Notes under the pieces: generated by a model | The model's database searches: none | Told to the model about the DNA's origin: nothing | The model's input: only the letters and a program-made list of their open reading frames with translations | Program-made: the position numbers and the translations under genes | Shown: positions 1,786 to 37,683 of the stretch, piece after piece | How the letters are laid out: each line of letters begins with the position of its first letter | Position numbering within the stretch: the first letter of the stretch is position 1 | Assembly (NCBI RefSeq): GCF_031769215.1 | Contig: NW_026782217.1 | Span: 620,001 to 684,000, forward strand | Reading direction: 5' to 3' | Length of the DNA stretch: 64,000 nt | Source: Ylistrum balloti | Lineage: Eukaryota

Positions 1786-2128
1786 CTGAAATAAACAAGA
1801 AAATAAGTTTTTGTCATATTAAAACAGTTCAACTTGTTATACTAACATGTATAATATTTTTCTGTTTCATTATGGAAATCTGGGTTTCGTCCTTAAATGT
1901 CTTTTTGTACAAGATAGTTATACATATGTGCTTTGCACGTGCACACGTTATGTAGTTCAAGTGCTATTAAAACTCATTTGGATATTTATACGTTATATGT
2001 GGAAAATAGAATTACAGAATTTATCTAATTATGGGGCTGCTGCACCTCCCCGTCTAGATTTTGAATTTTCTTTTCATCACTTTGGATTTTCCTTTGTCGC
2101 TTCCTAAGCTTCAAACTTTAGGCCCTTG

Positions 2129-2172
2129 GCATCACTGACGAGTCCTAGAGGGACGAAACAGCTGTATGATGC
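2129..2172 (+). ncRNA. Single minimal type I hammerhead ribozyme motif
   Basis: GCAUCA-CUGACGA-GUCC(UAGAG)GGAC-GAAA-C(AGCU)G-UA-UGAUGC with a perfect 6-bp stem I. Predicted cleavage after 2166. Confidence 0.85.
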
Positions 2173-2821
2173 AATTAAATTCATTGTTTGCTTCTACTGT
2201 ATCCCACTCTAAATTATGAAAAGGCGCTATTCACTTGTGTGTCTTTTGTACAATCTCTTGCGAAGACTAAAAGATTGTCGGATATTGCTTAAACAGCGAT
2301 TTATCAGAAAAAAGTTCAACAGAGCAAACGAGTTAGCCGTAATTGAGTCAGCAAGATATTGTTGTATGATATGCCCAAAAATCAAAATAAGGTTGAGCTT
2401 CATAGATCAGTTATATGAAACAGATTCCTTAAACAACTTATTGTGAACAGGTCCTTAATTCAAACTTAAACTCAATAAAGTTATGGCAAATATGATTAAA
2501 ACAATGTTTTAATTGAATACGCATGAAACTATACAAGGAGAATCAACCAGATGTTTCGGAATGGTAAACGTCTGCAACTTCAACGATAACACCTATCAAC
2601 AAAATTTTACTCAATCCAAGTAATTAATAACATGTTCCTCATGAGAACAAAGCAAACAATGACGAAATCACAAATCATAACATAGAACATCAAACGCATC
2701 CATCTTCATATTGAAAAAAAAGCCAGGACACATCCCAATGAGGCTAGCATGACGACCGTTAACATTTTAAACACACTAGGTGCGAATACAGCATCCGTTT
2801 GATTGACAAAACGGTACCGCT

Positions 2822-5800: not shown

Positions 5801-8800
5801 ACCCATCAATAAGATAAACAATGTGAGACATACCCATCAATAAGATAAACAATGTGAGACATACCCATCAATAAGATCAATAAACAATGTGAGACATACC
5901 CATCAATAAGACAAACAATGTGAGACATACCCATCAATAAGATAAACAATGTGAGACATACCCATCAATAAGATAAACAATGTGAGACATACCCATCAAT
6001 AAGACAATGTGAGACATAGCCATCAATAAGACAAACAATGTGAGACATACCCATCAATAAGATAAACAATGTGAGACATACCCATCAATAAGATAAACAA
6101 TGTGAGACATAGCCATCAATAAGACAAACAATGTGAGACATAGCCATCAATAAGACAAACAATATGAGACACACCCATCAATAAGACAAACAATGTGAGA
6201 CATACCCATCAATAAGATAAACAATGTGAGACATACCCATCAATAAGACAAAACAATGTGAGACATACCCATCAATAATCAATAAGACAAACAATGTGAG
6301 ACATACCCATCAATAAGATAAACAATGTGAGACATACCATCAATAAGATAAACAATGAGACAACCCATCAATAAACAATGTGAGACATACCCATCAATAA
6401 GATAAACAATGTGAGACATACCCATCAATAAGATAAACAATGTGAGACATACCCATCAATAAGATAAACAATGTGAGACATACCCATCAATAATATAAAC
6501 AATGTGAGACATACCCATCAATAAGACAAACAATGTGAGAGACATACCCATCAATAAGATAAACAATGTGAGACACACCCATCAATAAGACAAACAATGT
6601 GAGACACACCCATCAATAAGATAAACAATGTGAGACATACCCATCAATAAGACAATGTGAGACATACCCATCAATAAGATAAACAATGTGAGACATACCC
6701 ATCAATAATATAAACAATGTGAGACATACCCATCAATAAGACAAACAATGTGAGACATACCCATCAATAAGACAATGTGAGACATACCCATCAATAAGAT
6801 AAACAATGTGAGACATACCCATCAATAAACAATGTGAGACATACCCATCAATAAGATAAACAATGTGAGACATACCCATCAATAAGACAAACAATGTGAG
6901 ACATACCCATCAATAAGATAAACAATGTGAGACATACTCATCAATAAGATAAACAATGTGAGACATACCCATCAATAAGACAATGTGAGACATACCCATC
7001 AATAAGACAAACAATGTGAGACATACCCATCAATAAGATAAACAATGTGAGACATACCCATCAATAAGATAAACAATGTGAGACATACCCATCAATAAGA
7101 TAAACAATGTGAGACATACCCATAAGACAAACAAATAAGACACACCCATCAATAAACAATAAGACAAACAATGTGAGACATACCCATCAATAAGATAAAC
7201 AATGTGAGACATACCCATCAATAAGATAAACAATGTGAGACATACCCATCAATAAGATAAACAATGTGAGACATACCCATCAATAAGATAAACAATGTGA
7301 GACATACCCATCAATAAGACAAACAATGTGAGACATACCCATCAATAAGACAAACAATGTGAGACATACCCATCAATAAGATAAACAATGTGAGACATAC
7401 CCATCAATAAGATAAACAATGTGAGACATACCCATCAATAAGATAAACAATGTGAGACATACCCATCAATAAGACAAACAATGTGAGACATACCCATCAA
7501 TAAGATAAGACAATCAATGAAAACAATGTGAGACATACCCATCAATAAGATAAACAATGTGAGACATACCCATAAGACAATGTGAGACAATAAGATAAAC
7601 AATGTGAGACATACCCATCAATAAGACAAACAATGTGAGACATACCCATCAATAAGACAAACAATGTGAGACATATACCCAATCATACCCATCAATAAAT
7701 AAACAATGTGAGACATACCCATCAATAAGACAATGTGAGACATACCCATCAATAAGATAAACAATGTGAGACATACCCATCAATAAGACAAACAATGTGA
7801 GACATACCCATCAATAAGATAAACAATGTGAGACATACCCATCAATAAGATAAACAATGTGAGACATACCCATCAATAAGATAAACAATGTGAGACATAC
7901 CCATCAATAAGATAAACAATGTGAGACATACCCATCAATAAGATAAACAATGTGAGACATACCCATCAATAAGATAAACAATGTGAGACATACCCATCAA
8001 TAAGATAAACAATGTGAGACATACCCATCAATAAGAAAATGTGAGACATACCCAACAATAAGAAAAACAATGTGAGACACACCCATCAATAAGACAAACA
8101 ATGTGAGACATACCCATCAATAAGATAAACAATGTGAGACATACCCATCAATAAGATAAACAATGTGAGAAACAATGAGACAACCCATCAATAAACAATG
8201 TGAGACATACCCATCAATAAGATGAGACATACCCATCAATGACAAACAATGTGAGACATACCCACAATAAGATAAACAATGTGAGACATACCCATCAATA
8301 AGATAAACAATGTGAGACATACCCATCAATAAGACAAACAACATACCCATCAATAAGATAAACAATGTGAGACATACCCATCAATAAGATAAACAATGTG
8401 AGACATACCCATCAATAAGAAAAACAATGTGAGACATACCCATCAATAAGATAAACAATGTGAGACATACCCATCAATAAGATAAACAATGTGAGACATA
8501 CCCATCAATAAGACAAACAATGTGAGACATACCCATCAATAAGACAAACAATGTGAGACATACCCATCAATAAGACAAACAATGTGAGACATACCCATCA
8601 ATAAGATAAACAATGTGAGACATACCCATCAATAAGATAAACAATGTGAGACATACCCATCAATAAGACAAACAATGTGAGACATACCCATCAATAAGAT
8701 AAACAATGTGAGACATACCCATCAATAAGATAAACAATGTGAGACATACCCATCAATAAGACAAACAATGTGAGACATACCCATCAATAAGACATACCCA

Positions 8801-9458
8801 TCAATAAGACAAACAATGTGAGACATACCCATCAATAAGATAAACAATGTGAGACATACCCATCAATAAGATAAACAATGTGAGACATACCCATCAATGT
8901 GAGACATACCCATCAATAAGATAAACAATGTGAGACATACCCATCAATAAGATAAACAATGTGAGACATACCCATCAATAAGATAAACAATGTGAGACAT
9001 ACCCATCAATAAGATAAACAATGTGAGACATACCCATCAATAAGACAAACAATGTGAGACATACCCATCAATAAGATAAACAATGTGAGACATACCCATC
9101 AGATAAGATAAACAATGTGAGACATACCCATCAATAAGATAAACAATGTGAGACATACCCATCAATAAGAAAAACAGAGACATACCCATCAATAAACAAT
9201 GTGAGACATACCCATCAATAAGATAAACAATGTGAGACATACCCATCAATAAGATAAACAATGTGAGACATACCCATCAATAAGATAAACAATGTGAGAC
9301 ATACCCATCAATAAGATAAACAATGTGAGACACACCCATCAATAAGATAAACAATGTGAGACACACCCATCAATAAGATAAACAATGTGAGACATACCCA
9401 TCAATAAGATAAACAATGTGAGACATACCCATCAATAAGACAAACAATGTGAAAACAT
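2822..9458. repeat. Minisatellite, 31-bp unit AAACAATGTGAGACATACCCATCAATAAGAY (27-bp variant), about 215 copies
   Basis: Read directly; 6.6 kb inside SLC22 intron 7. Confidence 0.98.
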
Positions 9459-10650: not shown

Positions 10651-10793
10651 CTTAAGTGGTACACTGACTGAAGACTATATTAACCCGAGTAAGCAGGATA
10701 TTGACACCAATAGAATATCCTCGTACACACTTCTACACATAGCCTTCAAACGGGATCATATTGCTAACAGAAAAAAAGCTGAAGTTAACAGTC

Positions 10794-11786
10794 ATGCGGG
10801 ATCTGTATGTGGCAGTACTTGTGCTGCTCTTTGTCTCCACAGTAACAGCAGGGGGCTACGGACACCGTCGAAAACACCACGCCAATATCTATGGTCATAA
10901 TATTATAAGAACATTCCCAACACATCAGCAATATTCCTTCGGTGGACAAACGTACTTTGAAAATCCGATTCAGAATAGATTTCAGTATGTTACCTATCAG
11001 AATCCTGTTATAACTGCGGCCACCGTCCCGTTTCAAGGTAATAGTGTGATAACTGCTACTGGAATACCTTCTTCTTTCGCAAATGGCGCCTTCACTGGAA
11101 CAATTGGAACGACAGGAGTTCTTCTACAACATCCTCCACAAAACATCTACCCGAGCCAGACTCTTAGACTCGCATACCCCAGTACTCCGGTTGTCCCAGG
11201 AAATGTAGGCAGTCCAGGAATGACATTCCTTTCGGGAGCAACACAGAGCGTGCCTTTTCAATCTCCTGGTACTATTAACCTAGGAACCCAGAGCATAACT
11301 GCAGGTGGAATACCAGTTTCTCCTCTTGGTACCACCATACAGACTTCAAATGGGCCATTTCCATCCTCAACACTAGCATCTCCAGTTGGAATCACCACCG
11401 GAAGTACAATAATTCAAAATGGAGCTGCTGGTGGGATCGTCCCATTCAGTACGCAGCCAACTTCCGTGAGCTTACCTACTTCGTCGATCGGAAATATCCA
11501 AAATGGTGTGGCATTCCAGGATGTCGGTTTTAATTTGCCCGTAACCTCCAATTCTGCTTTTGACTCGGTGCCACAAGCATACGAACAAGAGCAAAATGGT
11601 CTTAAAACTGGCGTACCAACACTTGGCAATCCATTCAATGTAGAGGAGAAAGTCGGAATCCCTGAATTCGGGGGTTGGGCTCCACCTGTTGTGAACGACA
11701 TTGTCATCAGGGAAGACAATGCACTTCCAACGAGAATACAACATCGATCACTGGCTTCTATACTGAGGAAATTTCACATGAAGTAG
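10794..11786 (+). CDS. Intronless secreted low-complexity protein (330 aa, G/T/S/P/Q/N-rich, no Cys), nested antisense in SLC22 intron 7
   Basis: 993-nt non-repetitive ORF in AT-rich DNA. MRDLYVAVLVLLFVSTVTA is a signal-peptide-like start, followed by GGYGHRRKHH. TATA-like upstream; AATAAA at about 12069. No family recognised. Confidence 0.8.
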   Translation: MRDLYVAVLVLLFVSTVTAGGYGHRRKHHANIYGHNIIRTFPTHQQYSFGGQTYFENPIQNRFQYVTYQNPVITAATVPFQGNSVITATGIPSSFANGAFTGTIGTTGVLLQHPPQNIYPSQTLRLAYPSTPVVPGNVGSPGMTFLSGATQSVPFQSPGTINLGTQSITAGGIPVSPLGTTIQTSNGPFPSSTLASPVGITTGSTIIQNGAAGGIVPFSTQPTSVSLPTSSIGNIQNGVAFQDVGFNLPVTSNSAFDSVPQAYEQEQNGLKTGVPTLGNPFNVEEKVGIPEFGGWAPPVVNDIVIREDNALPTRIQHRSLASILRKFHMK

Positions 11787-16075: not shown

Positions 16076-17442
16076 TTTGGGTGCATTCACTGCAATTTTC
16101 TTATTTGTTCATAACTTGCTTTATTCTTGTTTATAACTTGGTTTATACTTGGTCGTTCATCAAACACTCATTGGAATGATAAAACGTTTCTCGTCAAGGT
16201 AAGGAATATTTTACTAAGGTCTGTTGCCCCTAGAATAGCAAAATACATAATAGAAAAAACATCCTTGTCGGGAGTTACACCTCTTGTCCCATACATATAT
16301 ATGGACCGTGAGTCGGGAATTCGTGTTAAATCCCTGTGTCTTAACATTACACTTCTAGATTTTAATCTGAGGAAGTTTTTTGATGGTTTTAACAAATTTG
16401 AATCATGTGACCCTGGAAAAGAGCTTAGGTAATTTCTTACAAGCTCTATCGCGCTTCAGTTCCGCTATAACCTATCAGCTAGATATCCCGTGTCTAGACG
16501 TTTTAGTTAACTAATCGTTTGAGGGTTTTAATAAATTTTATCCCTGTGGCCTAGAGAATTAGTTAAGGTTACTCTTTTTTGCTTACTTTGCTGGTATTTA
16601 TTCCAGAAACCTATCAGCCAAATGCCTTTAATACCTTGACCTCTAAGTATTGAGAAAAAGTAGTGTAACAAGAGAGGTTAGCACCGAATGGATGGGTCCA
16701 ACACCATGGCACAAGCTTACTTAAATCCTAAAATGATTTTTTTCTATCTTTGACCTTGAGTTAAAGGTCATTGTAATTTAATTTCAAAGTACATCCCCTT
16801 GGCTGTAGGGGGCGGTATGTATCAGCTTCATCGTGGTGTCTTTAATGTTTCAAAAGACAAAAATGGCCGAAAAAATTGCTAGGGAGTACACTGTCTGTTT
16901 ATTTAATTTTTATCAAGGTATCTCTCTACCGGCTCAAACGTAATGGTCCTGACAAGAAAATGCTGCACATATTTGATCTTTGACCAGACGAACCCTTAGG
17001 GATTTAGATTTCTGTTCTTACAAATAACATTTTTACGCGGCAATATGTAGTTAACTCTGGAAATACACTTCGATACATGTACAGTTAATAAAATCCTTCT
17101 ATATAAATTTGATAACCCTAAATGTTCATAAACCAATTTAAAAAAACATCGTATGAACAGCATCGAGTTCAACTGGACTCCCATAGTATACCGTAAGATT
17201 TTTTTTATGAATTATTCGCAAATATTATTACTATTATGCATCACTTAAAATCACATTTAGATGTGTGACATTATCTTCAAATTGAGACCACGATAAGCAA
17301 ACATCGCGCATATACAACAGGTGTAAGTAATACCAGGACTTTCTTGCTGAAAGCTGATCACCACGCGTAAATATTGATACACTCAATGTGGTTGGTTAGC
17401 TGCTCCTAGAGACTCCACACAACTGTTAATATATGTTCTTAC

Positions 17443-17560
17443 CTAACCACTGTAGGATATGTTTCCGCCGTGAAAACAATTAAGGATGTCCACGCCGCTC
17501 CAACACTTAATTTACAAGTCAGAGCAAATCCACTGATGACTACAGCTTTGTCTTCAACAT
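17443..17560 (-). CDS. SLC22: SLC22 transporter, coding exon 6
   Basis: TTTCCAG|AT; (D)VEDKAVVISGFALTCKLSVGAAWTSLIVFTAETYPTVVR (AExYPT..R motif). Donor AG|GTAAGA. Confidence 0.92.
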
Positions 17561-18574
17561 CTGGAAAATATAAACATAATTTACCAGTCTGTCTCATAGG
17601 CTGATCGCCATCTTGAAAGAGACATGTTTATTTTGGATTAATCGATTTTCGGATAAACAATATTCTTGGGAAGCAAAGATGTTGTAGGTAAAATAAGTTT
17701 TCAACATATGCTTTGAGCCATATAAAGAAAAGAGCACAAAAGTGTATTTGTATCCCTTTTTTCGATTGGGATGCTCGTTCCCATAAAGGTAATTTACCTG
17801 TTTGCATAATCTTTTTAATAATTGCAATAGGTTAGCGAGTACTGTCTATCAAATTGCATTATTTATATATGTATATATTTACTGGTAAGTAATATTAATC
17901 CTATACCTACTGTTCCCAGAGTCATAAACCACCTACCACGTGTATCTTTGCTGTCATCAGCAGTGCCGAAAAACAGCTGTTTTAGCACAAGCATCATATT
18001 ATTTTAAAGGCATAACTATCTTTTAAAAAAACGAGTTTTGGTATCGCTTTGGACAACTTATTTTGGATAAAAAAACGCAAATGCTATTATTTACGTTGGA
18101 AGGAGAGAAACTGTTTGGACGTAGGTGATCTGGCCAAGGTCAGTATATTGTCAATGTAAAGTAAACCCTGTTTAAACTCAAAATGCCGATGTTTCGCTTG
18201 TCTAAATTCTAAATATAATATAAATGTTCCTAGGTAAACAGAATACAATTTTTTTTTTTAAATAAGCTTCATTTTTTATTATAAACAGAAAAACAAAATC
18301 GACTCGCCCAAGCCTAACTGCTTTTGTCTTTCTTCGCTCTCGCCGTATTACAACTTACATCTTATGACACTGACCCTGTATTCTTCTATACATGCCATTA
18401 TTTGTCCACTCTATGTTGGTTTCAAGTACAATTCTTGACACAAGGGAACTATTTATCGAGTAGGTTAATAACGGAAAATATATTAAAAATAAATTGAGAG
18501 CGTTTTATCAAAAGTTCTTTAGTGTTTGTCGTACACCATATCAATTAGACATCGTTATTCTCGTCAGATCTCAC

Positions 18575-18657
18575 CTACAACTTCCACAACTGCTACCACA
18601 ATACCGGCCACACCTCCAATCACAAAAAACAGAAGGCATGTTAGTCTCCGGCCAATA
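18575..18657 (-). CDS. SLC22: SLC22 transporter, coding exon 5
   Basis: Not in the ORF track. CAG|T ATT; (C)IGRRLTCLLFFVIGGVAGIVVAVVEVV (GRR motif plus TM helix). Donor G|GTGAGA. Confidence 0.9.
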
Positions 18658-18941
18658 CTGTTAAACAGCAAGTCCCAAAAAGCAGTGTTAATATTGATGG
18701 CAGTGTAATGTATTTGGGTCAGTTTGATTCAATATACAAGAATGTACCTTACACTTAGTGATAGCAAACAAAAAGTTTACCATTAAATGGAATGGTACAG
18801 AGTTTCTAAAACTGTGACCACATACATACTAGATATAGTGATTCATTAATCTTGAATGTCTGCACAAAACATCTAATTAAATTGCACATTTCCATACATA
18901 TTTAGAGCTAGATACAATAAAACCAAATAATGAATTAATCT

Positions 18942-19660
18942 GCATCATACGGCTGTTTTGTCCTTCTAGGACTCGTCAGTGTTGCTACATCATACAGCTG
19001 TTTCGTACTTCTAGGACTCGTCAGTGTTGCTACATCATAAAGCTGTTTCGTCCTTCTAGGACTCGTCAGTGTTGCTACATCATACAGCTGTTTCGTCCTT
19101 CTAGGACTCGACAGTGTCGCTACATCATACGGCTGTTTCGTACTTCTAGGACTCGTCAGTGTTGCTACATCATAAAGCTGTTTCGTCCTTCTAGGACTCG
19201 TCAGTGTTGCTACATCATACAGCTGTTTCGTCCTTCTAGGACTCGACAGTGTCGCTACATCATACGGCTGTTTTGTCCTTCTAGGACTCGTCAGTGTTGC
19301 TACATCATAAAGCTGTTTCGTCCTTCTAGGACTCGACAGTGTCGCTACATCATACAGCTGTTTCGTCCTTCTAGGACTCGTCAGTGTTGCTACATCATAC
19401 AGCTGTTTCGTACTTCTAGGACTCGACAGTGTTGCTACATCATACAGCTGTTTTGTCCTTCTAGGACTCGTCAGTGTTGCTACATCATAAAGCTGTTTCG
19501 TCCTTCTAGGACTCGTCAGTGTTGCTACATCATACAGCTGTTTAGTACTTCTAGGACTCGACAGTGTCGCTACATCATATAGCTGTTTCGTCCTTCTAGG
19601 ACTCGTCAGTGTCGCTACATCATACAGATGTTTCGTCCTTCTAGGACTCGACAGTGTCGC
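18942..19660 (-). ncRNA. Tandem array of 16 minimal type I hammerhead ribozyme motifs (45-nt unit)
   Basis: Minus-strand unit GCAACA-CUGACGA-GUCC(UAGAA)GGAC-GAAA-C(AGCU)G-UA-UGAUGU-A: canonical core, 4-bp stem II, palindromic loop III and a pairable stem I. The copy at 19347-19390 matches the full consensus. Confidence 0.85.
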
Positions 19661-19892
19661 TATGGGCCGCAACTAGAGAAACCTAGATAGCAACTGCTGA
19701 TACTTTTTGAATATTTTTTAGTGAGTTTCAGACTTGATTTTAATTGTTACTGTCGTGGTATGAAATGTATGGCGATAAATATATTAAATTCGTTCCATCT
19801 TAAATGCATACGTTCTATAACACATACTTTGAGCGACTAGTTTCCTCACAGATTAATTAAAAACGATAAGCTTAAGATTCCGCTTAACTCAC

Positions 19893-20027
19893 CAGTTCGC
19901 CATGTAGTACGTGATTAACTGTGCAGGAACGTCGATAATATTGATGAGGAATATATTGATGTAGATATTACCGGAAAGGTTCTGGACACCAAAGGAAATG
20001 GCGTAATACACGTACGACGCCGTTACC
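19893..20027 (-). CDS. SLC22: SLC22 transporter, coding exon 4
   Basis: CAG|G GTA; VTASYVYYAISFGVQNLSGNIYINIFLINIIDVPA...MAN. Donor TG|GTGAGT. Confidence 0.93.
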
Positions 20028-20288
20028 CTGGCAACAAAAAAAGAAACGGCGTAATACACAAACGTCACTCTCACCAAGGCAACAGAAAGGAAATTACTTC
20101 ACACAAACACGACACTGCCGTTTATGATTACAAAAATGAAAATACCGAAATACTCATAGGATCATGTTACCATAGCAACAAAGAATATTTGTAAACGTTA
20201 GAAAATCTATGTTAATTCCAACTTTGTCACTTCAAAGAAAAATGTTACCAATTTATTTCGAAAAACGGAATATTATTAATTATCTTAC

Positions 20289-20522
20289 CATCCAACTCCC
20301 AGTAACATACTCCTCGACAGCAGTATTCTGGAGCATAATATATCTCGTAAATTATATGCGTGTTTTGAATGCCTGATGGACATGTCATTTTCTACAATAT
20401 CTGACAACATTGTAAAATCAGGAACACTTTTCTTGTTTGTCTTTGCTATCTTGTTTACGACTTTCATTGCATCACCCTGTTTCCCATGCGTTACCAACCA
20501 TCGAAAACTTTCTGGAAAGTAC
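20289..20522 (-). CDS. SLC22: SLC22 transporter, coding exon 3
   Basis: CAG|G TAC; YFPESFRWLVTHGK (PESxRWL motif) through SMLLGVGW. Donor TG|GTAAGA. Confidence 0.95.
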
Positions 20523-21476
20523 CTGGACATTATCAAAATAAACACAAAATTAATTATTAATCCTTCTGTCAGTTCCCAAACTCTGACAAGTAACATTTAA
20601 TTAGCTTAAATCTACACAAAACACATCAACGTTGAAAGAACGGTGTAGTTATGTCCATCTTGAAATACATATACATGAAATCATTGCGGCAGGAAGCGTT
20701 TATTTTTGCGATTGAAAATAATACCTTGATGAAGTGATATCGTGAAATAAAACTTTATATTAAAAGGTTTAATGACGTCAATTGGGAGTATAAGACCTAA
20801 ACTTGTACAAAGTTCCCTTGGACTAACGAAAACTGAATTGTTTTATTTGAGAATCTTAAATGAGTTAGGTGGTTTGGTATGATACCAGCCTTCAGAAAAT
20901 GGCATTATTCAAGTTCTAAGTGAATAAATTCAATATGGAAACTAATGTATTGATCTCATCTATCTGATAACTTAAATTAAGTGATATTCTCAAAATCAAT
21001 TCCACGTTTTTTTTTCATATCTTAGACAATTTTTTCACGTCTTTCGGTAAAGGTACAAGTGTGTTATGACATGTGTGTCTTTCTATAGTTCAGATCAGGT
21101 CGGACAGCTCAGTTGTGAGATAAAATCTCATTCATTTGAAGTTTAAGATAATGATATTTACATAATTTATAACGTATTTCAGAAATCTACAATGTTCAAA
21201 CATTAGGAATCTACTGACTGTAAAAAGAAAATTTTCAGTTGGTTGAAATTTCGTGGTTTTCAAAAGTTGAAATACGTTAGTTTATGAGTACTTATTTTCG
21301 TGGATGAAGAGCTCTAAAACAAAATACTAAATTACAATATAAGAGTGAGTTGATTAATTGATTAACTATATAAATTGGTGGGTTAACAGTGCCCACGAAA
21401 TCAGCATAAATATTTTCTGTCGTAAATTAACTATTCTATAGTACTTCAGTGAAGATGTTAACAAAGAGTCACTCAC

Positions 21477-21898
21477 CACCAAGCCAACAGCCATGGAAAA
21501 GAGGCGACAGCGGTTGCTAGGTGCAAGTATTTCCAATTATGCAGCCACATGCAAAAGAAGGCAAACAGGCCACACCATACTGCCCATATAGGGAACGTCG
21601 TTGTTATTGCTCTATATTGAGCAGGTGTGAACTCAATCAGGTAGGTGTAGAATACTGCTATATAGCACCCAACGGCGAAACCAATGAAAAATCGGAGCAC
21701 GGCGAACATCTGCCAGGACACGGAATATGCCGCTATTGCATTAGTTATCACAAGGGTCAACAAAGATAAGAAGTAAATTGGTTTTCTTCCATAAGCATCC
21801 GCGAAATGTCCAGAAAAGAATCCGCTAACAAAAAGTCCCGCCATTTGAATTGTTGTGATAGTTGATGTTATCAGCTCCCGATCACAAACAAGATCCCA
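21477..21898 (-). CDS. SLC22: SLC22 transporter, coding exon 2
   Basis: AAG|TGG acceptor; WDLVCD...FADAYGRKP...LRFFIG...YLIEFTPAQYRA...HNWKYL (SLC22/MFS motifs). Donor TG|GTGAGT. Confidence 0.95.
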
Positions 21899-22561
21899 CT
21901 TTGAAACAAGAAACAAAAACGTGACGAATTCTCCAGAACTAAATAAAATTATCCTGAAGGGAAATACGGACTTCTAAATATATTGGAAAGGAGTACTATT
22001 GAAAACATATTTTTGCACTTGATGGGGGTTAAGTTGGGTGGGAATGGGTTATAACTTTCACGTGATATGAAATTATATGCCCCACCCCACGACGATAAAA
22101 TAAGCGTAAAATATTGCCTACAATCCGTGGAAAAACGATATAGTTAAAAGCTAACTTATAGCCTTTTGTAAATAAATGTACTCGATAGTTTAGAAGATCC
22201 TGCGTTCAGAAGTACAGAATAACACCGAACACTCCAACACACAGTTTACCGTTTTTCAATCATGTTATGTTTTATTTTGTCAGTAGAACCGTAAACCCAA
22301 AATCTTGAATTTCATTAGCGGTATCGCCATTGCTATTTCCAAAGAACCCGTTATAAGCAAAGCGATTTTTGTGCTAGATATCACGTCAACTGACAGACAA
22401 ACTGAAAACATTTGGTTTCATTAGATAATAGTTGATAAAAAATATGGGAAGGTTTCATGCTGTCAAAGTCATCTCATTGAAAAATACTCTATTTCTTTGC
22501 GTGATATGAAGCTGGGCGTGTTTGACTCTCTTTAGGTTTACGTGGCGGGTGTCGTCGATGA

Positions 22562-22629
22562 AGCAGAAGACGCTTACCCTTCCGGAACACCTGGTCTTAT
22601 TCTCCTTGTACTTCTTCAAGAGTCTCCGT
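22562..22629. repeat. Interspersed repeat fragment (CTTACCCTTCCGGAACACCTG family)
   Basis: A homologous copy at about 24470-24534 and an inverted decayed copy at about 2545-2575. Confidence 0.5.
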
Positions 22630-22708
22630 ATTGGTATCTTCTATTAGTTTTCATTGAAATAAGAGGGGGAAAATATGTGTTAACATATTGAAAAGTTTCT
22701 AAACTCAC

Positions 22709-23020
22709 CTCATTAACGATATCGTACAGGTTGTTTGTAAACCTATGTCGAATACAGGAGGACGAGGATGTATTGGCTGGCGGTGAACACTCCTGGAAAG
22801 AGGAGTTTGTCAAGGGAATCTCCGTCACGGTGCTGTCAGTTCTATTTATAGTGTAATCGCACCACCAATCAGGTATAACGCCTGCGTATGACATCATCAT
22901 CATGCTCCAGGCAACCGGAAGTTTACTACCCATGACGACCGTGTACATAACAAACTGGAACCTTCCGAACCCACCACATTCCTGTAGTTTACTCTCAAGA
23001 TATTCGCTGATTGATTGCAT
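22709..23020 (-). CDS. SLC22: SLC22-family organic cation/anion transporter, coding exon 1 of 8
   Basis: ATG at 23020; MQSISEYLESKLQECGGFGRFQ...YAGVIPDWWC...DIVNE, a typical SLC22 N-terminus and extracellular loop. Ends at donor GAG|GTGAGT and joins in phase 0 to WDLVCD. Confidence 0.93.
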
Positions 23021-25362: not shown

Positions 25363-26060
25363 GGGGATACACGGCCGCTATCTGGGGTACATGGTCGGCT
25401 GTCGGGGTAGGTGGCCATCTGTCGGGGTACACGACCGCTATCTGGGCTACACGGTCGGCTGTCGGGGTAGGTGGCCATCTGTCGGGGTACATGGTCGGCT
25501 GTCGGGGTACACGGTCCACTGTTGGAGTAGGTGGCCGGCTGTCGGGGTACAAGGTCGGCTGTCGGGGTTTGGGTACACGGTCGGCTGTCGGGGTAGGTGG
25601 CCGTCTGTCGGGGTACACGGTCGGCTGTCGGGGTCGGGGTACACGGTCGGCTGTCTGGGTAGGTGGCCGGCTGTCGGGGTACACGGTCGGCTGTCGGGGT
25701 TTGGGTACACGGTCGGCTGTCTGGGTAGATGGCCGTCTGTTGGGGTACACGGTCGGCTGTCTGGGTAGATGGCCGGCTGTCGGGTTACACGGTCGGCTGT
25801 CGGGGTCGGGGTACACGGTCGGCTGTCTGGGAAAGTGGCCGGCTGTCGGGGTACACGGTCGGCTGTCGGGGTTTGGGTACACGGTCGGCTGTCTGGGTAG
25901 ATGGCCGTCTGTCGGGGTACACGGTCGGCTGTCTGGGTAGGTGGCCGGCTGTCGGGTTACACGGTCGGCTGTCGGGGTCGGGGTACACGGTCGGCTGTCA
26001 GGGTAGGTGGCCGTCTGTCGGGGTACACGGTCGGCTGTCGGGGTACGCGGCCGACTGTCG
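25363..26060. repeat. GC-rich minisatellite, about 20-bp period (GGGGTACACGGTCGGCTGTC / GGGGTAGGTGGCCGTCTGTC)
   Basis: GTCGGGG recurs at 25461, 25481 and 25501; two alternating variants with 7-nt insertions. Confidence 0.95.
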
Positions 26061-26097
26061 ACACTTGATGTCGAAGCTATGTTACTCACTTCTGCTG

Positions 26098-27510
26098 CCT
26101 GAAATGGTGTATAATATGACCTGTGTAGGGTATTACAGTTCCTGTGTGTACCCATATCGCTGACACTCCAGTGACCTGGAATGGTGTATAATATGATCTG
26201 TGTAGGTATTACAGTTCCTGTGTGTACCCATATCGCTGACACTCCAGTGACCTGGAATGGTATATAATATGACCTGTGTTGGGTATTACAGTTCCTGTGT
26301 GTACCCATATCGCTGACACTCCAGTGACCTGGAATGGTATATAATATGACCTGTGTTGGGTATAACAGTTCCTGTGTGTACCCATATCGCTGACACTCCA
26401 GTGACCTGGAATGGTATATAATATGACCTGTGTTGGGTATAACAGTTCCTGTGTGTACCCATATCGCTGACACTCCAGTGACCTGGAATGGTATATAATA
26501 TGACCTGTGTTGGGTATAACAGTTCCTGTGTGTACCCATATCGCTGACACTCCAATGACCTGGAATGGTATATAATATGACCTGTGTTGGGTATAACAGT
26601 TCCTGTGTGTACCCATATCGCTGACACTCCAATGACCTGGAATGGTATATAATATGACCTGTGTTGGGTATAACAGTTCCTGTGTGTACCCATATCGCTG
26701 ACACTCCAATGACCTGGAATGGTATATAATATGACCTGTGTTGGGTATAACAGTTCCTGTGTGTACCCATATCGCTGACACTCCAATGACCTGGAATGGT
26801 GTATAATATGACCTGTGTTGGGTATAACAGTTCCTGTGTGTACCCATATCGCTGACACTCCAATGACCTGGAATGGTATATAATATGACCTGTGTTGGGT
26901 ATAACAGTTCCTGTGTGTACCCATATCGCTGACACTCCAGTGACCTGGAATGGTGTATAATATGACCTGTGTTGGGTATTACAGTTCCTGTGTGTACCCA
27001 TATCGCTGACACTCCAGTGACCTGGAATGGTGTATAATATGACCTGTGTTGGGTATTACAGTTCCTGTGTGTACCCATATCGCTGACACTCCAATGACCT
27101 GGAATGGTGTATAATATGATCTGTGTTGGGTATAACAGTTCCTGTGTGTACCCATATCGCTGACACTCCAGTGACCTGGAATGGTATATAATATGACCTG
27201 TGTTGGGTATAACAGTTCCTGTGTGTACCCATATCGCTGACACTCCAGTGACCTGGAATGGTATATAATATGACCTGTGTTGGGTATTACAGTTCCTGTG
27301 TGTACCCATATCGCTGACACTCCAGTGACCTGGAATGGTGTATAATATGATCTGTGTAGGGTATTACAGTTCCTGTGTGTACCCATATCGCTGACACTCC
27401 AATGACCTGGAATGGTGTATAATATGACCTGTGTTGGGTATTACAGTTCCTGTGTGTGTACCCATATCGCTGACACTCCAGTGACCTGGAATGGTGTATA
27501 ATATGACCTG
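26098..27510. repeat. Minisatellite, 77-bp unit, about 18 copies
   Basis: GACCTGTGTTGGGTATAACAGTTCCTGTGTGTACCCATATCGCTGACACTCCAGTGACCTGGAATGGTATATAATAT repeated. Confidence 0.98.
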
Positions 27511-27925: not shown

Positions 27926-28293
27926 TCACTTTTGTTTTATTCGCTGTATCAGTACAGATTCTAATGGATTCAGCATCCGTTTAGATTCAGATGTTGCTGA
28001 TTGAACTTTAACCTTTGAATGTGCCACGTCTCTTTCATTGTCAGGCACCCCTAATCTTGTTAAAAGTCTTGAGGAGAATGCAGGAATCACTGGTTGTATT
28101 AAAATTCCACAAACTCGTAGTGTCTCCATGGCGATGTAAATCACTGTTTCTAAATGCTCCTTCTCACTTTCAGTTTTCACTAAAATCCAAGGTTTATGAT
28201 CATCGATCAGTTTATTTAGCCAGAAAAGATAGGTCATCAGTGTCTGTAATACTAGGTACACATTGCCATCTTCATAGAATCTATCCACTCGAT
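27926..28293 (-). CDS. MARS2: MARS2 terminal coding exon 12 (anticodon-binding domain)
   Basis: TTTCAG|AT; ...KLIDDHKPW...METLRVCGILIQPVIP...RIKQK-TGA; AATAAA at 27890-27885. The twelve exons sum to 1755 nt = 584 aa + stop. Confidence 0.93.
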
Positions 28294-28332
28294 CTGAAAA
28301 ATCAACAAATAAAAACCACATCAGAAAATGTA

Positions 28333-29618: not shown

Positions 29619-30059
29619 CTGCGAAAGAAACATTTTCATATTCTTCAATATCACCATATGTAGAATAAAAAATAAAGGAAGCATTTTTTTCCCAAAAACT
29701 TCATATGTATACAATGTACCTACTGTAATGAAATTCACAGTAACTGTACCATAATTCTTTGTGTACAGAATCTAATCTTGATGTTTTTCAACACAATACT
29801 ATTTCAGCACTTTCGTTGATGAAAAGTACTCAAAAAATTCATAAAAGATAAATATTAAAATTTAAAGGGATTTATCAATTTGTGAAATTTGTGTAAAAAC
29901 TGAAAATAGTTTATGGACAATCATACCTAAACATTAGAGAGTCTTTCTGTGCCAAGACATTGTATGTTATATTGGTGTATCTTTTTATATGTAGGTGGGT
30001 GATATCACCAGGCATGGGCATGAATGTGGGTGGGTGATAATACCATGCATAAACTTGGT

Positions 30060-32748
30060 AGGTGAATGACAATAACAAGCATGGACTATGAGGTGAGTGA
30101 CAATAACAAGCATGGACTATGAGGTGGGTGAGTGACAATAACAACCATGGACTATGAGGTGGGTGAGTGACAATAACAAGCATGGACTATGAGGTGGGTG
30201 AGTGACAATAACAAGCATGGACTATGAGGTGGGTGAGTGACAATAACAAGCATGGACTATGAGGTGGGTGAGTGACAATAACAAGCATGGACTATGAGGT
30301 GGGTGAGTGACAATAACAAGCATGGACTATGAGGTGGGTGAGTGACAATAACAAGCATGGACTATGAGGTGGGTGAGTGACAATAACAAGCATGGACTAT
30401 GAGGTGGGTGAGTGACAATAACAAGCATGGACTATGAGGTGAGTGACAATAACAAGCATGGACTATGAGGTGGGTGAGTGACAATAACAAGCATGGACTA
30501 TGAGGTGGGTGAGTGACAATAACAAGCATGGACTATGAGGTGGGTGAGTGACAATAACAAGCATGGACTATGAGGTGGGTGAGTGACAATAACAAGCATG
30601 GACTATGAGGTGGGTGAGTGACAATAACAAGCATGGACTATGAGGTGGGTGAGTGACAATAACAAGCATGGACTATGAGGTGGGTGAGTGACAATAACAA
30701 GCATGGACTATGAGGTGGGTGAGTGACAATAACAAGCATGGACTATGAGGTGGGTGAGTGACAATAACAAGCATGGACTATGAGGTGGGTGAGTGACAAT
30801 AACAAGCATGGACTATGAGGTGGGTGAGTGACAATAACAAGCATGGACTATGAGGTGGTGAGTGACAATAACAAGCATGGACTATGAGGTGGGTGAGTGA
30901 CAATAACAAGCATGGACTATGAGGTGGGTGAGTGACAATAACAAGCATGGACTATGAGGTGGGTGAGTGACAATAACAAGCATGGACTATGAGGTGGGTG
31001 AGTGACAATAACAAGCATGGACTATGAGGTGGGTGAGTGACAATAACAAGCATGGACTATGAGGTGGGTGAGTGACAATAACAAGCATGGACTATGAGGT
31101 GGGTGAGTGACAATAACAAGCATGGACTATGAGGTGAGTGACAATAACAAGCGCGGACTATGAGGTGGGTGAGTGACAATAACAAGCATGGACTATGAGG
31201 TGGGTGAGTGACAATAACAAGCATGGACTATGAGGTGGGTGAGTGACAATAACAAGCATGGACTATGAGGTGGGTGAGTGACAATAACAAGCATGGACTA
31301 TGAGGTGGGTGAGTGACAATAACAAGCATGGACTATGAGGTGGGTGAGTGACAATAACAAGCATGGACTATGAGGTGGGTGAGTGACAATAACAAGCATG
31401 GACTATGAGGTGGGTGAGTGACAATAACAAGCATGGACTATGAGGTGGGTGAGTGACAATAACAAGCATGGACTATGAGGTGGGTGAGTGACAATAACAA
31501 GCATGGACTATGAGGTGGGTGAGTGACAATAACAAGCATGGACTATGAGGTGGGTGAGTGACAATAACAAGCATGGACTATGAGGTGGGTGAGTGACAAT
31601 AACAAGCATGGACTATGAGGTGGGTGAGTGACAATAACAAGCATGGACTATGAGGTGGGTGAGGGACAATAACAAGCATGGACTATGAGGTGGGTGAGTG
31701 ACAATAACAAGCGCGGACTATGAGGTGGGTGAGTGACAATAACAAGCATGGACTATGAGGTGAGTGACATGAGGTGGGTGAGTGACAATAACAAGCATGG
31801 GCTATGAGGTGGGTGAGTGACAATAACAAGCATGGACTATGAGGTGGGTGAGTGACAATAACAAGCATGGACTATGAGGTGGGTGAGTGACAATAACAAG
31901 CATGGACTATGAGGTGGGTGAGTGACAATAACAAGCATGGACTATGAGGTGGGTGAGTGACAATAACAAGCATGGACTATGAGGTGGGTGAGTGACAATA
32001 ACAAGCATGGACTATGAGGTCTGTGAGTGACAATAACAAGCATGGACTATGAGGTGGGTGAGTGACAATAACAAGCATGGACTATGAGGTGGGTGAGTGA
32101 CAATAACAAGCATGGACTATGAGGTGGGTGAGTGACAATAACAAGCATGGACTATGAGGTGGGTGAGTGACAATAACAAGCATGGACTATGAGGTGGGTG
32201 AGTGACAATAACAAGCATGGACTATGAGGTGGGTGAGTGACAATAACAAGCATGGACTATGAGGTGGGTGAGTGACAATAACAAGCATGGACTATGAGGT
32301 GGGTGAGTGACAATAACAAGCAAGGACTATGAGGTGGGTGAGTGACAATAACAAGCATGGACTATGAGGTGGGTGAGTGACAATAACAAGCATGGACTAT
32401 GAGGTGGGTGAGTGACAATAACAAGCATGGACTATGAGGTGGGTGAGTGACAATAACAAGCATGGACTATGAGGTGGGTGAGTGACAATAACAAGCATGG
32501 ACTATGAGGTGGGTGAGTGACAATAACAAGCATGGACTATGAGGTGAGTGACAATAACAAGCGCGGACTATGAGGTGGGTGAGTGACAATAACAAGCATG
32601 GACTATGAAGTGGGTGAGTGACAATAACAAGCATGGACTATGAGGTGGGTGAGTGACAATAACAAGCATGGACTATGAGGTGGGTGAGTGACAATAACAA
32701 GCATGGACTATGAGGTGGGTGAGTGATAATAACAAGCATGGACTATGA
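30060..32748. repeat. Minisatellite, 35-bp unit GTGGGTGAGTGACAATAACAAGCATGGACTATGAG, about 77 copies
   Basis: Highly homogeneous array in MARS2 intron 10. Confidence 0.98.
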
Positions 32749-32786
32749 TGCATCAGGCTGTGAATTTTTTATCATATGAAAATTAC

Positions 32787-32898
32787 CAGCATCTTTCTGA
32801 GGAGTAGCCTGCCTTAGTAAGAAATAACGGACTCCATCCACAGTGTATTTGGACATACACTCCAGGGGATCCACTACATTACCCAGACTCTTTGACAT
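32787..32898 (-). CDS. MARS2: MARS2 coding exon 10 (K|MSKS motif)
   Basis: TTTCAG|ATG; [37 protein letters not shown]. Donor G|GTAATT. Confidence 0.95.
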
Positions 32899-34667: not shown

Positions 34668-35202
34668 GATATGGGTATCAACAGACATGATATGGGTATT
34701 AACAGACATAATATGGGTATCAACAGACATGATATGGGTATAAACAGATATGATATGGGTATTAAGACATGATATGGGTATTAACAGATATGATATGGGT
34801 ATTAAGACATGATATGGGTATCAACAGACATGATATGGGTATTAACAGATATGATATGGGTATTAAGACATGATATGGGTATCAATCGATATGATATGGG
34901 TATTAACAGACATGATATGGGTATTAACAGACATGATATGGGTATCAACAGACATGATATGGGTATTAACAGACATGATATGGGTATCAACAGACATGAT
35001 ATGGGTATTAACAGACATGATATGGGTATTAACAGATATGATATGGGTATTAAGACATGATATGGGTATTAAGACATGATATGGGTATTAAGACATGATA
35101 TGGGTATCAATCGATATGATATGGGTATTAACAGACATGATATGGGTATTAACAGACATGATATGGGTATTAAAAGACATGATATGGGTATTAACAGACA
35201 TG
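34668..35202. repeat. Minisatellite, 21-bp unit GATATGGGTATTAACAGACAT (19-bp variant)
   Basis: Read directly; MARS2 intron 8. Confidence 0.97.
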
Positions 35203-36837: not shown

Positions 36838-37180
36838 ACTATCATCATCATGAACATCATCATCATCACCCTCCAACATCATCATCATCTTAAAATATCA
36901 TCATCACCCTCCAACATCATCATCATCTTAAAATATCATCATCACCCTCCAACATCATCATCATCTTAAAATATCATCATCACCCTCCAACATCATCATC
37001 ATCTTAAAATATCATCATCACCCTCCAACATCATCATCATCTTAAAATATCATCATCACCCTCCAACATCATCATCATCTTAAAATATCATCATCACCCT
37101 CCAACATCATCATCATCTTAAAATATCATCATCACCCTCCAACATCATCATCATCTTAAAATATCATCATCACCCTCCAA

Positions 37181-37221
<41 letters not shown>

Positions 37222-37267
37222 CCCTCCAACATCATCATCATCTTAAAATATCATCATCACCCTCCAA

Positions 37268-37299
<32 letters not shown>

Positions 37300-37424
37300 C
37301 CCTCCAACATCATCATCATCTTAAAATATCATCATCACCCTCCAACATCATCATCATCTTAAAATATCATCATCACCCTCCAACATCATCATCATCATCT
37401 TAAAATATCATCATCATCCTCCAA

Positions 37425-37463
<39 letters not shown>

Positions 37464-37580
37464 ACATCATCATCATCATCATCATCATCCAACATCATCA
37501 TCATCTTAAAATATCATCATCACCCTCCAACATCATCATCATCATCTTAAAATATCATCATCATCCTCCAACATCATGTT

Positions 37581-37646
<66 letters not shown>
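36838..37646. repeat. (CAT)n-derived 38-bp minisatellite grading into pure (CAT)n
   Basis: ATCATCATCACCCTCCAACATCATCATCATCTTAAAAT repeated; pure CAT run at the right end. Confidence 0.96.
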
Positions 37647-37648
<2 letters not shown>

Positions 37649-37683
37649 GATTATTGTATTTCATCATCCCATGCGGGATATAG

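What the first reader, a model, noticed from the sequence alone, without database searches (positions are those of the whole stretch)
18942..19660. A minisatellite whose 45-nt monomer is a whole hammerhead ribozyme, in the sense strand of an SLC22 intron
Seen: 16 head-to-tail units; on the minus strand each reads stem I (GCAACA) - CUGACGA - GUCC/GGAC stem II - GAAA - C(AGCU)G - UA - stem I' (UGAUGU), with a single linker base. The array lies in intron 4 of the SLC22 gene and is transcribed as the ribozyme strand. Established: minimal type I hammerheads with a palindromic loop III occur in Penelope-like elements and non-LTR retrozymes and cleave efficiently as dimers, but retrozyme monomers are normally well over 100 nt with the ribozyme as only one part. 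Inference: here the repeat unit is reduced to the ribozyme alone. That could give a self-processing RNA ladder or 45-nt-multiple circles, or a co-transcriptional cutter inside a host pre-mRNA.
Basis: partly seen in the sequence, partly recalled or inferred. Interest (0 to 1): 0.92.

Follow-up and report, generated by a model that had tools for sequence, protein, structure and literature searches.

The report
Hammerhead-ribozyme minisatellite inside a decayed retroelement
A 720-base repeat in a transporter-gene intron is 16 back-to-back copies of a 45-base self-cutting RNA motif, but it is one worn-out copy of a mobile-element family found thousands of times in this genome, with no sign that it serves the host gene.

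Summary
Window 18943-19662 is a 16-unit, 45-bp tandem array. Its minus strand reads as a canonical type I hammerhead (HHR), sense to an MFS/SLC22-like gene, between exon-like ORFs 4 and 5.

It is not a stand-alone 45-nt retrozyme. It is the internal part of a 5'-truncated copy of a ~398-nt non-coding, retrozyme-like retroelement. That parent has thousands of copies with a common 3' end, variable 5' truncation and more-than-unit copies. Only its HHR segment has been amplified.

- The same unit-to-unit junction occurs 17,769 times in the assembly, against 0 in controls.
- Arrays grow at the DNA level: 74- and 135-bp blocks, and arrays fixed for dead cores. Units decay neutrally.
- The family-consensus dimer folds (MFE) into an exact double hammerhead, with neighbours forming helix III together.
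- The focal copy does not fold that way. Eleven of its 16 cores are mutated, helix I has an A.A mismatch, and the best Rfam score is 43.5 against a threshold of 48.5.
- No RNA data exist.

Most likely this is an old, decaying insertion with at most weak residual cleavage and no host role. The scan has already reported this family several times elsewhere in this genome. HHR-only units are unusual: published monomers are 150-450 bp, and one preprint lists 51 bp.

The parts
18943..19662 (-). 16-unit, 45-bp tandem array; each unit is one hammerhead module (parent-element positions 267-311)
   Evidence: TRF; unit listing; Rfam relaxed search
19346..19390 (-). unit 7, the only unit matching the array consensus at every position (type I reading; A17 at 19353)
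19355..19405 (-). best junction-spanning hammerhead. The site of unit 6 (A17 at 19398) lies next to the core of unit 7. Helix III is formed by the palindromes of the two units, and helix I is the hairpin UGAUG-UAG-CAACA.
   Evidence: Rfam Hammerhead_3 43.5 bits, E 6.5e-8, below the threshold of 48.5; isolated 51-mer MFE keeps helices III and II
19490..19540 (-). junction hammerhead, units 3 to 4 (predicted cut 19533|19532)
   Evidence: Rfam Hammerhead_3 39.2 bits; rule-based check
19175..19225 (-). junction hammerhead, units 10 to 11 (predicted cut 19218|19217)
   Evidence: Rfam Hammerhead_3 39.2 bits
19040..19090 (-). junction hammerhead, units 13 to 14 (predicted cut 19083|19082)
   Evidence: Rfam Hammerhead_3 39.2 bits
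18986..19255 (-). two copies of a 135-bp, three-unit block (units 10-12 and 13-15) differing at 1 of 135 positions: a recent DNA-level duplication
   Evidence: unit listing; identity at lag 3 is 0.95 against 0.93 at lag 1
18854..18942 (-). 3' tail of the parent retroelement (parent positions about 312-398), diverged
   Evidence: local alignment to the family consensus, score 95, window 18948-18861; 0.79 identity
19663..19672 (-). last about 10 nt of the parent 5' body (GGCCCATA-like); nothing recognisable further upstream, so the copy is 5'-truncated
   Evidence: upstream alignment score 29, which is noise
19893..20077 (-). exon-like ORF upstream of the array (host MFS/SLC22-like gene), ending at a GTGAGT donor
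17439..17611 (-). exon-like ORF downstream of the array, preceded by a pyrimidine tract and AG
2020..2256 (+). a separate, 5'-truncated single-hammerhead copy of the same retroelement family, antisense to the host gene (HHR at 2129-2172)
   Evidence: Rfam Hammerhead_1 33.7 bits against a threshold of 34

Best explanation
The array is the hammerhead module of a mobile element, amplified into a minisatellite and now decaying in an intron.

The parent. It is a ~398-nt, 39% GC, non-coding retroelement of the non-LTR retrozyme kind. It carries one canonical type I hammerhead with a perfect 6-bp helix I, a 4-bp helix II, and a 2-bp helix III with the palindromic loop AGCU. Its copies share one 3' end and are truncated at variable 5' positions. 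Full-length copies run on into the end of a preceding unit. This points to reverse transcription of a multimeric or circular RNA (inferred).

The array lineage. In one lineage of this element the 45 nt that make up the ribozyme were duplicated head to tail. Every array examined has the same junction (GATG|TAGCA). I therefore infer that the duplication arose once and was then spread by retrotransposition.

Folding. Back-to-back units can fold as a double hammerhead. The palindromes of two neighbours form an 8-bp helix III, and the 3' helix I strand of one unit pairs with the 5' strand of the next through a UAG loop. This is the predicted minimum-energy fold of the family consensus.

Array growth. 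After insertion, arrays grow and shrink by ordinary DNA-level unequal exchange or slippage, regardless of ribozyme integrity. Units decay neutrally.

The focal copy. It is a 5'-truncated insertion, about 18854-19672 on the minus strand, lying about 220 nt downstream of the intron's donor site and sense to the gene. Eleven of its 16 cores are dead. Four or five junctions still pair an intact cleavage site with an intact neighbouring core. At most this gives weak co-transcriptional cutting of intron RNA. I propose no function for the host.
For: Array and motif.

Dispersed family:
- 154 matches and 683 first-look candidates with a 180-nt query.
- Arrays of 6 to more than 59 units on about 20 contigs.
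- 17,769 unit-to-unit junctions, 2,258 HHR-to-tail junctions and 1,359 body-to-HHR junctions, against 0 for the reversed controls.

Parent element:
- Conserved flanks on both sides of the arrays.
- At least 3,829 candidates for the single-HHR form and a consensus from them.
- Constant 3' end with 5' ends at positions 1 to 170, plus partial head-to-tail tandems.
- Full-length copies preceded by the tail of another unit; GC 0.39.

Bona fide hammerhead: family members pass Rfam Hammerhead_1 gathering (35.8, 34.6 and 34.1 bits against 34).

DNA-level growth:
- The focal 135-bp block is duplicated with 1 difference.
- L015 has a 74-nt higher-order unit containing a 16-nt deletion, amplified at 96-97%.
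- Arrays on contigs 643, 418 and 220 are fixed or nearly fixed for G5>U, A6>U and G12>U.
- The window holds at least 10 other minisatellites.

Neutral decay: across 455 units, catalytic positions are no better conserved than loops (about 0.95 against 0.94), and 51% of cores are intact. In single copies the HHR diverges 6.9% against 8.1% for the 3' flank.

Folding: the consensus dimer MFE of -27.9 kcal/mol is the nested double hammerhead. The monomer's HHR fold is -6.4 against an MFE of -12.2. Focal neighbour pairs share only 0-12 of the 27 target pairs.

Insertion anatomy. Gene context. Both array edges are present in an independent run's contigs.
Against: - No RNA evidence of any kind exists, so transcription, cleavage and circularisation are all inferred.
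- The autonomous partner (presumably a Penelope-like element) was not identified. No target-site duplication was found: only 7-nt matches.
- The single origin of the 45-nt duplication rests on the shared junction. A structure-directed mechanism that recurs would give the same junction.
- Array units are 2-3 times closer to the family consensus (2.5-9%) than the adjacent flanks are (roughly 10-30%). Simple neutral decay in place does not predict this. It may reflect lineage differences, turnover or constraint.
- My sample is the 21 arrays most similar to the focal one.
- The isolated 51-nt junction 19355-19405 does fold compatibly with a hammerhead, so residual activity cannot be excluded.
Confidence: 0.8

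Rival explanations
1. The array is a working co-transcriptional cutter used by the host: sense-strand hammerheads cleave the SLC22-like pre-mRNA inside the intron and so tune its expression.
For: The array is in sense orientation, about 220 nt downstream of the donor site. Four or five junctions keep an intact site next to an intact core. The isolated 51-mer folds compatibly with a hammerhead.
Against: This is one of thousands of family copies, present in equal numbers on both strands. Eleven of 16 cores are dead, and lesions are spread as in other arrays. Neighbouring units are not predicted to adopt the active fold. Rfam scores are below threshold. A preprint on vertebrates reports retrozymes depleted from introns, suggesting they are harmful there rather than recruited (10.64898/2026.07.22.740005).
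Confidence: 0.04
2. The arrays are made at the RNA/cDNA level. Two adjacent hammerheads release a 45-nt RNA. It is ligated into a circle and copied by rolling-circle reverse transcription. Template switches back to the full-length RNA supply the flanks.
For: The unit equals the distance from one cleavage site to the next. Some arrays are uniform for one variant, as copying one circle would give. The parent's more-than-unit copies suggest circular or multimeric templates.
Against: Higher-order blocks of 74 nt (with an internal deletion) and of 135 nt cannot come from a 45-nt circle. Arrays uniform for dead cores could not have released their own circle. Two precise template switches would be needed at every locus. 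The genome makes many unrelated minisatellites of similar unit size.
Confidence: 0.08
3. The array-bearing form is an adaptive innovation of the element, not just slippage. Adjacent hammerheads give a built-in dimer, so even a solitary insertion can process itself. On this reading the focal copy is a dead descendant of such a lineage.
For: The duplicated segment matches the ribozyme's limits to within 1-2 nt. The same junction occurs 17,769 times, about 8 times the count of HHR-to-tail junctions. The consensus dimer MFE is the exact double hammerhead, whereas the monomer disfavours the active fold. Array consensus sequences stay within 0-2 differences of a perfect ribozyme while flanks differ much more.
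Against: Units decay neutrally in place. Arrays also grow when the ribozyme is dead. The copy-number excess could be produced by DNA-level expansion alone. No activity data exist.
Confidence: 0.3
4. The array is an assembly artefact, or it encodes a repeat protein (the 245-aa open frame 18935-19672, minus strand).
For: Short-read contigs do not span the array. Open frames run through it on both strands.
Against: Independent contigs cross both edges into the array (18581-18972 and 19627-20300). The same structure recurs at many loci. A 45-nt unit is 15 codons, so stop-free frames stay open automatically. Variation among units shows no codon pattern. Pfam gives only a sub-threshold chance hit.
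Confidence: 0.02

Closest known systems
Non-LTR retrozymes of metazoans (Cervera & de la Pena 2020, PMC7229834), e.g. the mussel repeats of 350-390 bp
   Same: The parent element has a canonical type I hammerhead with a weak helix III and a palindromic loop. It has low GC (39%), no coding capacity, a size of about 398 nt, head-to-tail or more-than-unit copies, thousands of copies, and a bivalve-type host.
   Different: Here the hammerhead module alone (45 nt) is repeated inside the element, up to more than 59 times. Described retrozymes repeat the whole 150-450-nt monomer. circRNA expression was not tested.
Short retrozyme families in vertebrates (Li, Clavereau & Pollet 2026 preprint, 10.64898/2026.07.22.740005)
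   Same: These are tandem repeats containing type I hammerheads, detected with TRF plus a motif search. Consensus lengths are reported from 51 to 972 bp, so near-ribozyme-only units have been listed. The preprint proposes a link to Penelope-like elements.
   Different: The 51-bp case is only a number in a range, with no structure or context described. The hosts are vertebrates. Here the unit is 45 bp with a single linker base and is shown to be embedded in a larger element.
Hammerhead satellites: newt satellite 2 (330 bp), Schistosoma Sm-alpha, Dolichopoda pDo500 (PMC2837043)
   Same: They are tandem DNA whose transcripts carry a type I hammerhead with the same helix II (GUCC/GGAC) and core as the Rfam Hammerhead_1 consensus. 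Activity depends on dimers (Forster et al. 1988, as cited in PMC4209133).
   Different: Their monomers are 330-500 bp and the ribozyme is a small part of each. Here there is no spacer at all, and helix I of the junction form is a hairpin closed by 3 nt.
Minimal hammerheads of Penelope-like elements that act as dimers (Cervera & de la Pena 2014, PMC4209133; Lunse et al. 2017, known to me only from reference lists)
   Same: Helix III is formed between two copies. They are associated with retroelements and show low activity as monomers.
   Different: PLE min-HHRs lack helix III and loop 3, have a long helix II (6-8 bp) and a short helix I, and sit in pseudo-LTRs about 3 kb apart. This ribozyme is the canonical type with a 4-bp helix II and a 6-bp helix I, and its copies touch each other.
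Intronic hammerheads of amniotes and Xenopus (de la Pena & Garcia-Robles 2010; from my own knowledge, not read here)
   Same: They are sense-strand hammerheads inside introns of protein-coding genes.
   Different: Those are single, conserved across species and intact. This one is a multi-copy, mostly mutated copy of a transposable element with no evidence of conservation.

Membership tests
Hammerhead ribozyme (general definition) | Conserved core C3 U4 G5 A6 N7 G8 A9 / G12 A13 A14 / A15.1-U16.1 / H17 | tested here: met
   The array consensus and the family consensus carry every core nucleotide. In the focal array 5 of 16 units keep the core and helix II, and 16 of 16 keep U16.1 and A17.
Hammerhead ribozyme (general definition) | Three helices I, II and III around the core | tested here: met
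   Helix II is GUCC/GGAC. Helix I is 6 bp (perfect in the family, A.A mismatch here). Helix III is 2 bp within a unit or 6-8 bp between neighbours. The consensus dimer MFE equals the double hammerhead. Focal pairs do not reach that fold.
Hammerhead ribozyme (general definition) | Self-cleavage 3' of H17 | not testable with these tools
   No RNA runs are available. An in vitro assay is needed.
Rfam Hammerhead_1 (RF00163) | Score at or above the gathering threshold of 34 bits | tested here: inconclusive
   Family members pass: L015 units score 35.8 and 34.6, and L035 scores 34.1. The window's single copy scores 33.7. Focal array units reach at most 17.5.
Rfam Hammerhead_3 (RF00008), junction-spanning reading | Score at or above the gathering threshold of 48.5 bits | tested here: not met
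   The best focal hit scores 43.5 bits and the others 34.6-39.2. The topology fits, but loop 1 is only 3 nt and helix I is mismatched.
Non-LTR retrozyme (parent element) | Non-coding tandem or head-to-tail repeats of 150-450 bp, each with one type I hammerhead, and GC below about 45-50% | tested here: met
   The consensus is 398 nt with GC 0.39. Partial tandems and more-than-unit copies are present. This holds for the parent, not for the 45-bp array unit.
Non-LTR retrozyme (parent element) | Expressed as linear and circular monomer RNA | not testable with these tools
   No RNA data.
Non-LTR retrozyme (parent element) | Mobilised by an autonomous retroelement (a PLE is proposed); target-site duplications | tested here: inconclusive
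   The 5'-truncation series with a fixed 3' end fits target-primed reverse transcription. No PLE ORF lies next to any of the 60 loci. No convincing TSD was found at the focal copy.
PLE minimal hammerhead (min-HHR) | No helix III or loop 3, long helix II (6-8 bp), short helix I, located in pseudo-LTRs | tested here: not met
   Helix II is 4 bp, helix I is 6 bp, and helix III with loop AGCU is present. There is no flanking RT/GIY-YIG ORF.
SLC22 transporter gene (host) | MFS fold with SLC22-type motifs | tested here: inconclusive
   Pfam Sugar_tr hits at E 1.1e-15 and MFS_1 at 2.3e-12 on exon-like ORF 2. The subfamily rests only on motifs seen by eye. The exons were not joined or searched as a spliced model.

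The most novel reading that the evidence does not exclude
A retrozyme lineage has turned its ribozyme into a spacer-free tandem array in which each unit supplies half of its neighbour's helix III and helix I. This would be the most compact natural self-cleaving repeat known. If so, intact arrays elsewhere in this genome are processed in vivo into 45-nt (or multiple) RNAs, possibly circles, and the built-in dimer is what made this form about eight times more numerous than the single-hammerhead form. The focal intronic copy would be a dead relic of that system.
Probability: 0.25. Interest if true: 0.6.

Novelty: new variant of a known kind. Interest (0 to 1): 0.38.

Why it matters
Animal hammerheads with a weak helix III need a second copy to cut. 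Described elements provide that copy by repeating a whole monomer of a few hundred nucleotides.

Here the ribozyme alone is repeated with one linker base. The consensus is predicted to fold into a perfect nested double hammerhead.

If intact arrays are active, they would be a natural minimal system for dimer-dependent self-cleavage. They would also be a possible source of very small linear or circular RNAs. And they would show how a functional RNA module inside a transposon can seed a minisatellite of roughly 18,000 units.

For this particular locus the practical message is the opposite. It is an ordinary decayed transposon copy and should not be read as a regulator of the transporter gene.

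Tried and rejected
- Rfam at gathering thresholds over the whole window: no hit.
- RNA evidence: the look-up of sequencing runs returned no RNA run, only one run of unknown kind kept as contigs. Read laying on it confirmed the two array edges but could not span the array or show RNA ends.
The sample therefore stayed at 21 arrays and 30 single copies.
- A general three-unit higher-order repeat: seen only weakly here and clearly in one other array (contig 1032). It is not a family trait.
- Stronger conservation of catalytic positions than of loops in genomic units: not seen.
- Target-site duplication at the focal insertion: only 7-nt matches.
- A Penelope-like ORF next to family copies: none in 60 loci. 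One unrelated LINE-type RT fragment lies in L005.
- Coding reading of the 245-aa frame: rejected.
- The 'progenitor' reading of the single copy at 2020-2256: rejected. It is one of thousands of copies and is itself 5'-truncated.
- Literature: searches for the sequence itself and for hammerhead plus scallop found nothing relevant. A first fuzzy-regex script timed out.
- The spliced gene model was not joined or searched as a whole. Exons were searched one by one by reference only.

Full report
**Observation.** Tandem Repeats Finder reports one array at 18943-19662: period 45, 16.0 copies, 92% matches, no indels. On the minus strand in 45-nt register, the consensus unit reads as follows:
- GCAACA (5' strand of helix I), then CUGACGA;
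- GUCC-UAGAA-GGAC (helix II), then GAA;
- ACAGCUGU (a 2-bp helix III with the palindromic loop AGCU), then A17;
- UGAUGU (3' strand of helix I) and one linker A.

It is not true of every unit. Unit 19390-19346 alone is fully consensus, and 5 of 16 units keep an intact core and helix II. The recurrent lesions are A6>U, G12>A, a G>U change in helix II, and two changes in the palindrome. All units in this array carry an A.A mismatch in helix I.

**Rfam.** At curated thresholds Rfam reports nothing in the window. A relaxed search of 18700-19900 gives six Hammerhead_3 matches of 34.6-43.5 bits (threshold 48.5; E down to 6.5e-8). All are in a permuted register that spans unit junctions. In that register:
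- the cleavage site and the 3' helix I strand come from unit n;
- the 5' helix I strand, core and helix II come from unit n+1;
- helix I closes as a hairpin with loop UAG;
- helix III is formed by the palindromes of the two neighbouring units.

**Gene context.** Exon-like ORFs lie on the minus strand at 22616-23020, 21473-21916, 20285-20596 and 19889-20077. The array follows, then ORFs at 17439-17597 and 1561-1764. The second ORF hits Pfam Sugar_tr (E 1.1e-15) and MFS_1. The ORFs either side of the array end in GTGAGT and GTAAGA donors, and the downstream one is preceded by a pyrimidine tract and AG. So the array lies in an intron, about 220 nt from the donor, with the ribozyme strand sense to the gene. 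The 'SLC22' label rests on motifs I recognise by eye. No RNA run holds the stretch, so transcription is inferred.

**The array is one member of a very large family.** A 180-nt query from the array finds 154 matches (683 first-look candidates) on dozens of contigs. In the loci returned, arrays range from 6 to more than 59 units. Pattern counts in the 648-Mb assembly, allowing up to 2 mismatches in 26 nt, are:

| Junction | Count |
|---|---|
| unit to unit | 17,769 |
| hammerhead to 3' tail | 2,258 |
| 5' body to hammerhead | 1,359 |
| reversed controls | 0 |

The unit-to-unit matches are nearly equal on the two strands. An independent run's contigs cross both edges of the focal array (18581-18972 and 19627-20300). 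They pile up inside it to summed depths of up to about 2.3e5, against about 9 in the flanks. This fits roughly 10^4 units, although the tool warns that this depth is no copy number. The number of units at this locus is not verified by short contigs.

**The arrays sit inside a larger element.** Sequences on both sides of the arrays are homologous between loci. They are also homologous to a single-hammerhead copy at window 2020-2256 on the plus strand. That form has at least 3,829 candidates in the genome. A consensus from 30 copies is about 398 nt with 39% GC. Three features describe the copies:
- They share one 3' end (...GTACAATCTTT).
- They start at parent positions 1, 11, 13, 15, 20, 43, 47, 59, 93 ... 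170, which is a classic 5'-truncation series.
- Full-length copies are preceded by the tail of another unit, and some loci hold partial head-to-tail tandems.

These are the features of non-LTR retrozymes, described in a mussel as 350-390-bp repeats (PMC7229834). The best-preserved members pass the Rfam Hammerhead_1 threshold (35.8, 34.6 and 34.1 bits against 34). The window's single copy scores 33.7.

The array unit corresponds to parent positions 267-311, which is the ribozyme to within 1-2 nt at each end. The focal insertion keeps only about 10 nt of the 5' body, the 16 units, and a diverged but complete 3' tail reaching about 18854. No target-site duplication was found, and no Penelope-like ORF lies in any of the 60 loci.

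**How arrays arise and change.** Every array has the same junction, GATG|TAGCA. The simplest reading is one ancestral duplication followed by retrotransposition of the array-bearing form. This is an inference; a structure-guided mechanism that recurs would look the same. Later growth is at the DNA level:
- In the focal array, units 10-12 and 13-15 form a duplicated 135-bp block with one difference, while adjacent units differ at 3-5 positions.
- Locus L015 has a 74-nt higher-order unit, made of one full unit plus one with a 16-nt deletion, repeated at 96-97% identity.
- Arrays on three other contigs are fixed or nearly fixed for core-killing changes (G5>U, A6>U, G12>U).
- The window itself holds at least ten unrelated minisatellites with 21-77-bp units.

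Decay looks neutral. Over 455 units from 21 arrays, catalytic positions are conserved no better than loops (about 0.95 against 0.94), and 51% of cores are intact. In single copies the hammerhead diverges 6.9% and the 3' flank 8.1%.

One point remains unexplained. Array units lie 2.5-9% from the family consensus, and array consensus sequences differ from it at 0-2 positions. The adjacent flanks are roughly 10-30% away. Lineage differences in the flanks, inter-array exchange, or constraint in the replicating lineage could each explain this. My biased sample cannot decide between them.

**Folding.** For the family consensus, the minimum-energy structure of two units (-27.9 kcal/mol) is exactly a nested double hammerhead. 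Four units give two nested pairs. A single unit prefers another fold (-12.2) over the hammerhead fold (-6.4). This agrees with the known dimer dependence of such ribozymes (PMC4209133).

The focal array behaves differently. Neighbouring unit pairs share only 0-12 of the 27 target base pairs in their predicted folds. The isolated 51-mer 19355-19405 does keep helices III and II. Rule-based checks leave 4 of 15 junctions with an intact site next to an intact core and at least 5 contiguous helix III pairs. These are the same places as the best Rfam hits.

**Comparison with what is known.** The library I could search describes hammerhead repeats of 150-450 bp (PMC7229834), 330-500-bp satellites (PMC2837043) and PLE minimal hammerheads (PMC4209133). 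A 2026 preprint lists vertebrate retrozyme consensus lengths of 51-972 bp, without describing the short ones, and finds retrozymes depleted from introns (10.64898/2026.07.22.740005). I found no description of spacer-free 45-bp hammerhead arrays, nor of this sequence.

Earlier notes of this same scan had already reported the family at several other places in this genome. They called the genome a scallop, which I did not verify. Their conclusions were like mine. I tested the shared points independently here.

**Verdict.** It is a decayed, 5'-truncated copy of an array-bearing retrozyme-like element. The family-level design, a built-in ribozyme dimer, is the interesting part and remains to be tested at the bench.

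Noticed in passing
window 2020-2256 (+), HHR at 2129-2172: A second copy of the same retroelement family lies in the same gene, with a single intact-looking type I hammerhead (Rfam Hammerhead_1 33.7 bits, threshold 34). It is antisense to the gene and 5'-truncated at about parent position 150. It is one of thousands of copies, not the progenitor of the array.
   Followed up: yes
L015:961-1532 (genome contig 495): An array of the same family with a 74-nt higher-order unit: one complete 45-nt hammerhead plus a 29-nt unit lacking 16 nt. It is amplified at 96-97% identity. This shows that DNA-level amplification ignores ribozyme integrity.
   Followed up: yes
arrays on contigs 16 and 19 (places listed): Some junction matches are spaced 42 nt or 87 nt apart instead of 45, so unit-length variants of the array exist.
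   Followed up: no
21 arrays in L001-L030: Array units are 2-3 times closer to the family consensus than the flanks right next to them. Neutral decay in place does not predict this, and it is not resolved.
   Followed up: partly
window 2821-9452, 25364-27510, 30057-32748, 34668-35202, 36841-38441, 39903-40839, 46094-47088, 54196-56243: The window is packed with unrelated minisatellites. Unit sizes are 31, 40/66, 77, 35, 21, 38, 75, 60, 49 and 39 bp, with up to 218 copies. The genome is therefore very prone to this kind of expansion.
   Followed up: no
window 27926-28321 (-) and 32743-32898 (-): Exon-like ORFs of a methionyl-tRNA synthetase gene (Pfam Anticodon_3, tRNA-synt_1g). The 35-bp minisatellite at 30057-32748 lies between them.
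   Followed up: no
window 39105-39518 (-): A fragment of a LINE-type reverse transcriptase (RVT_1, E 4e-5, below the cut-off), next to a 60-bp minisatellite.
   Followed up: no
window 10761-11786 (+): A 341-aa open frame with a signal-peptide-like start and a Pro/Gly/Thr/Ser-rich body. It has no Pfam family. It lies between exons of the transporter gene on the opposite strand.
   Followed up: no
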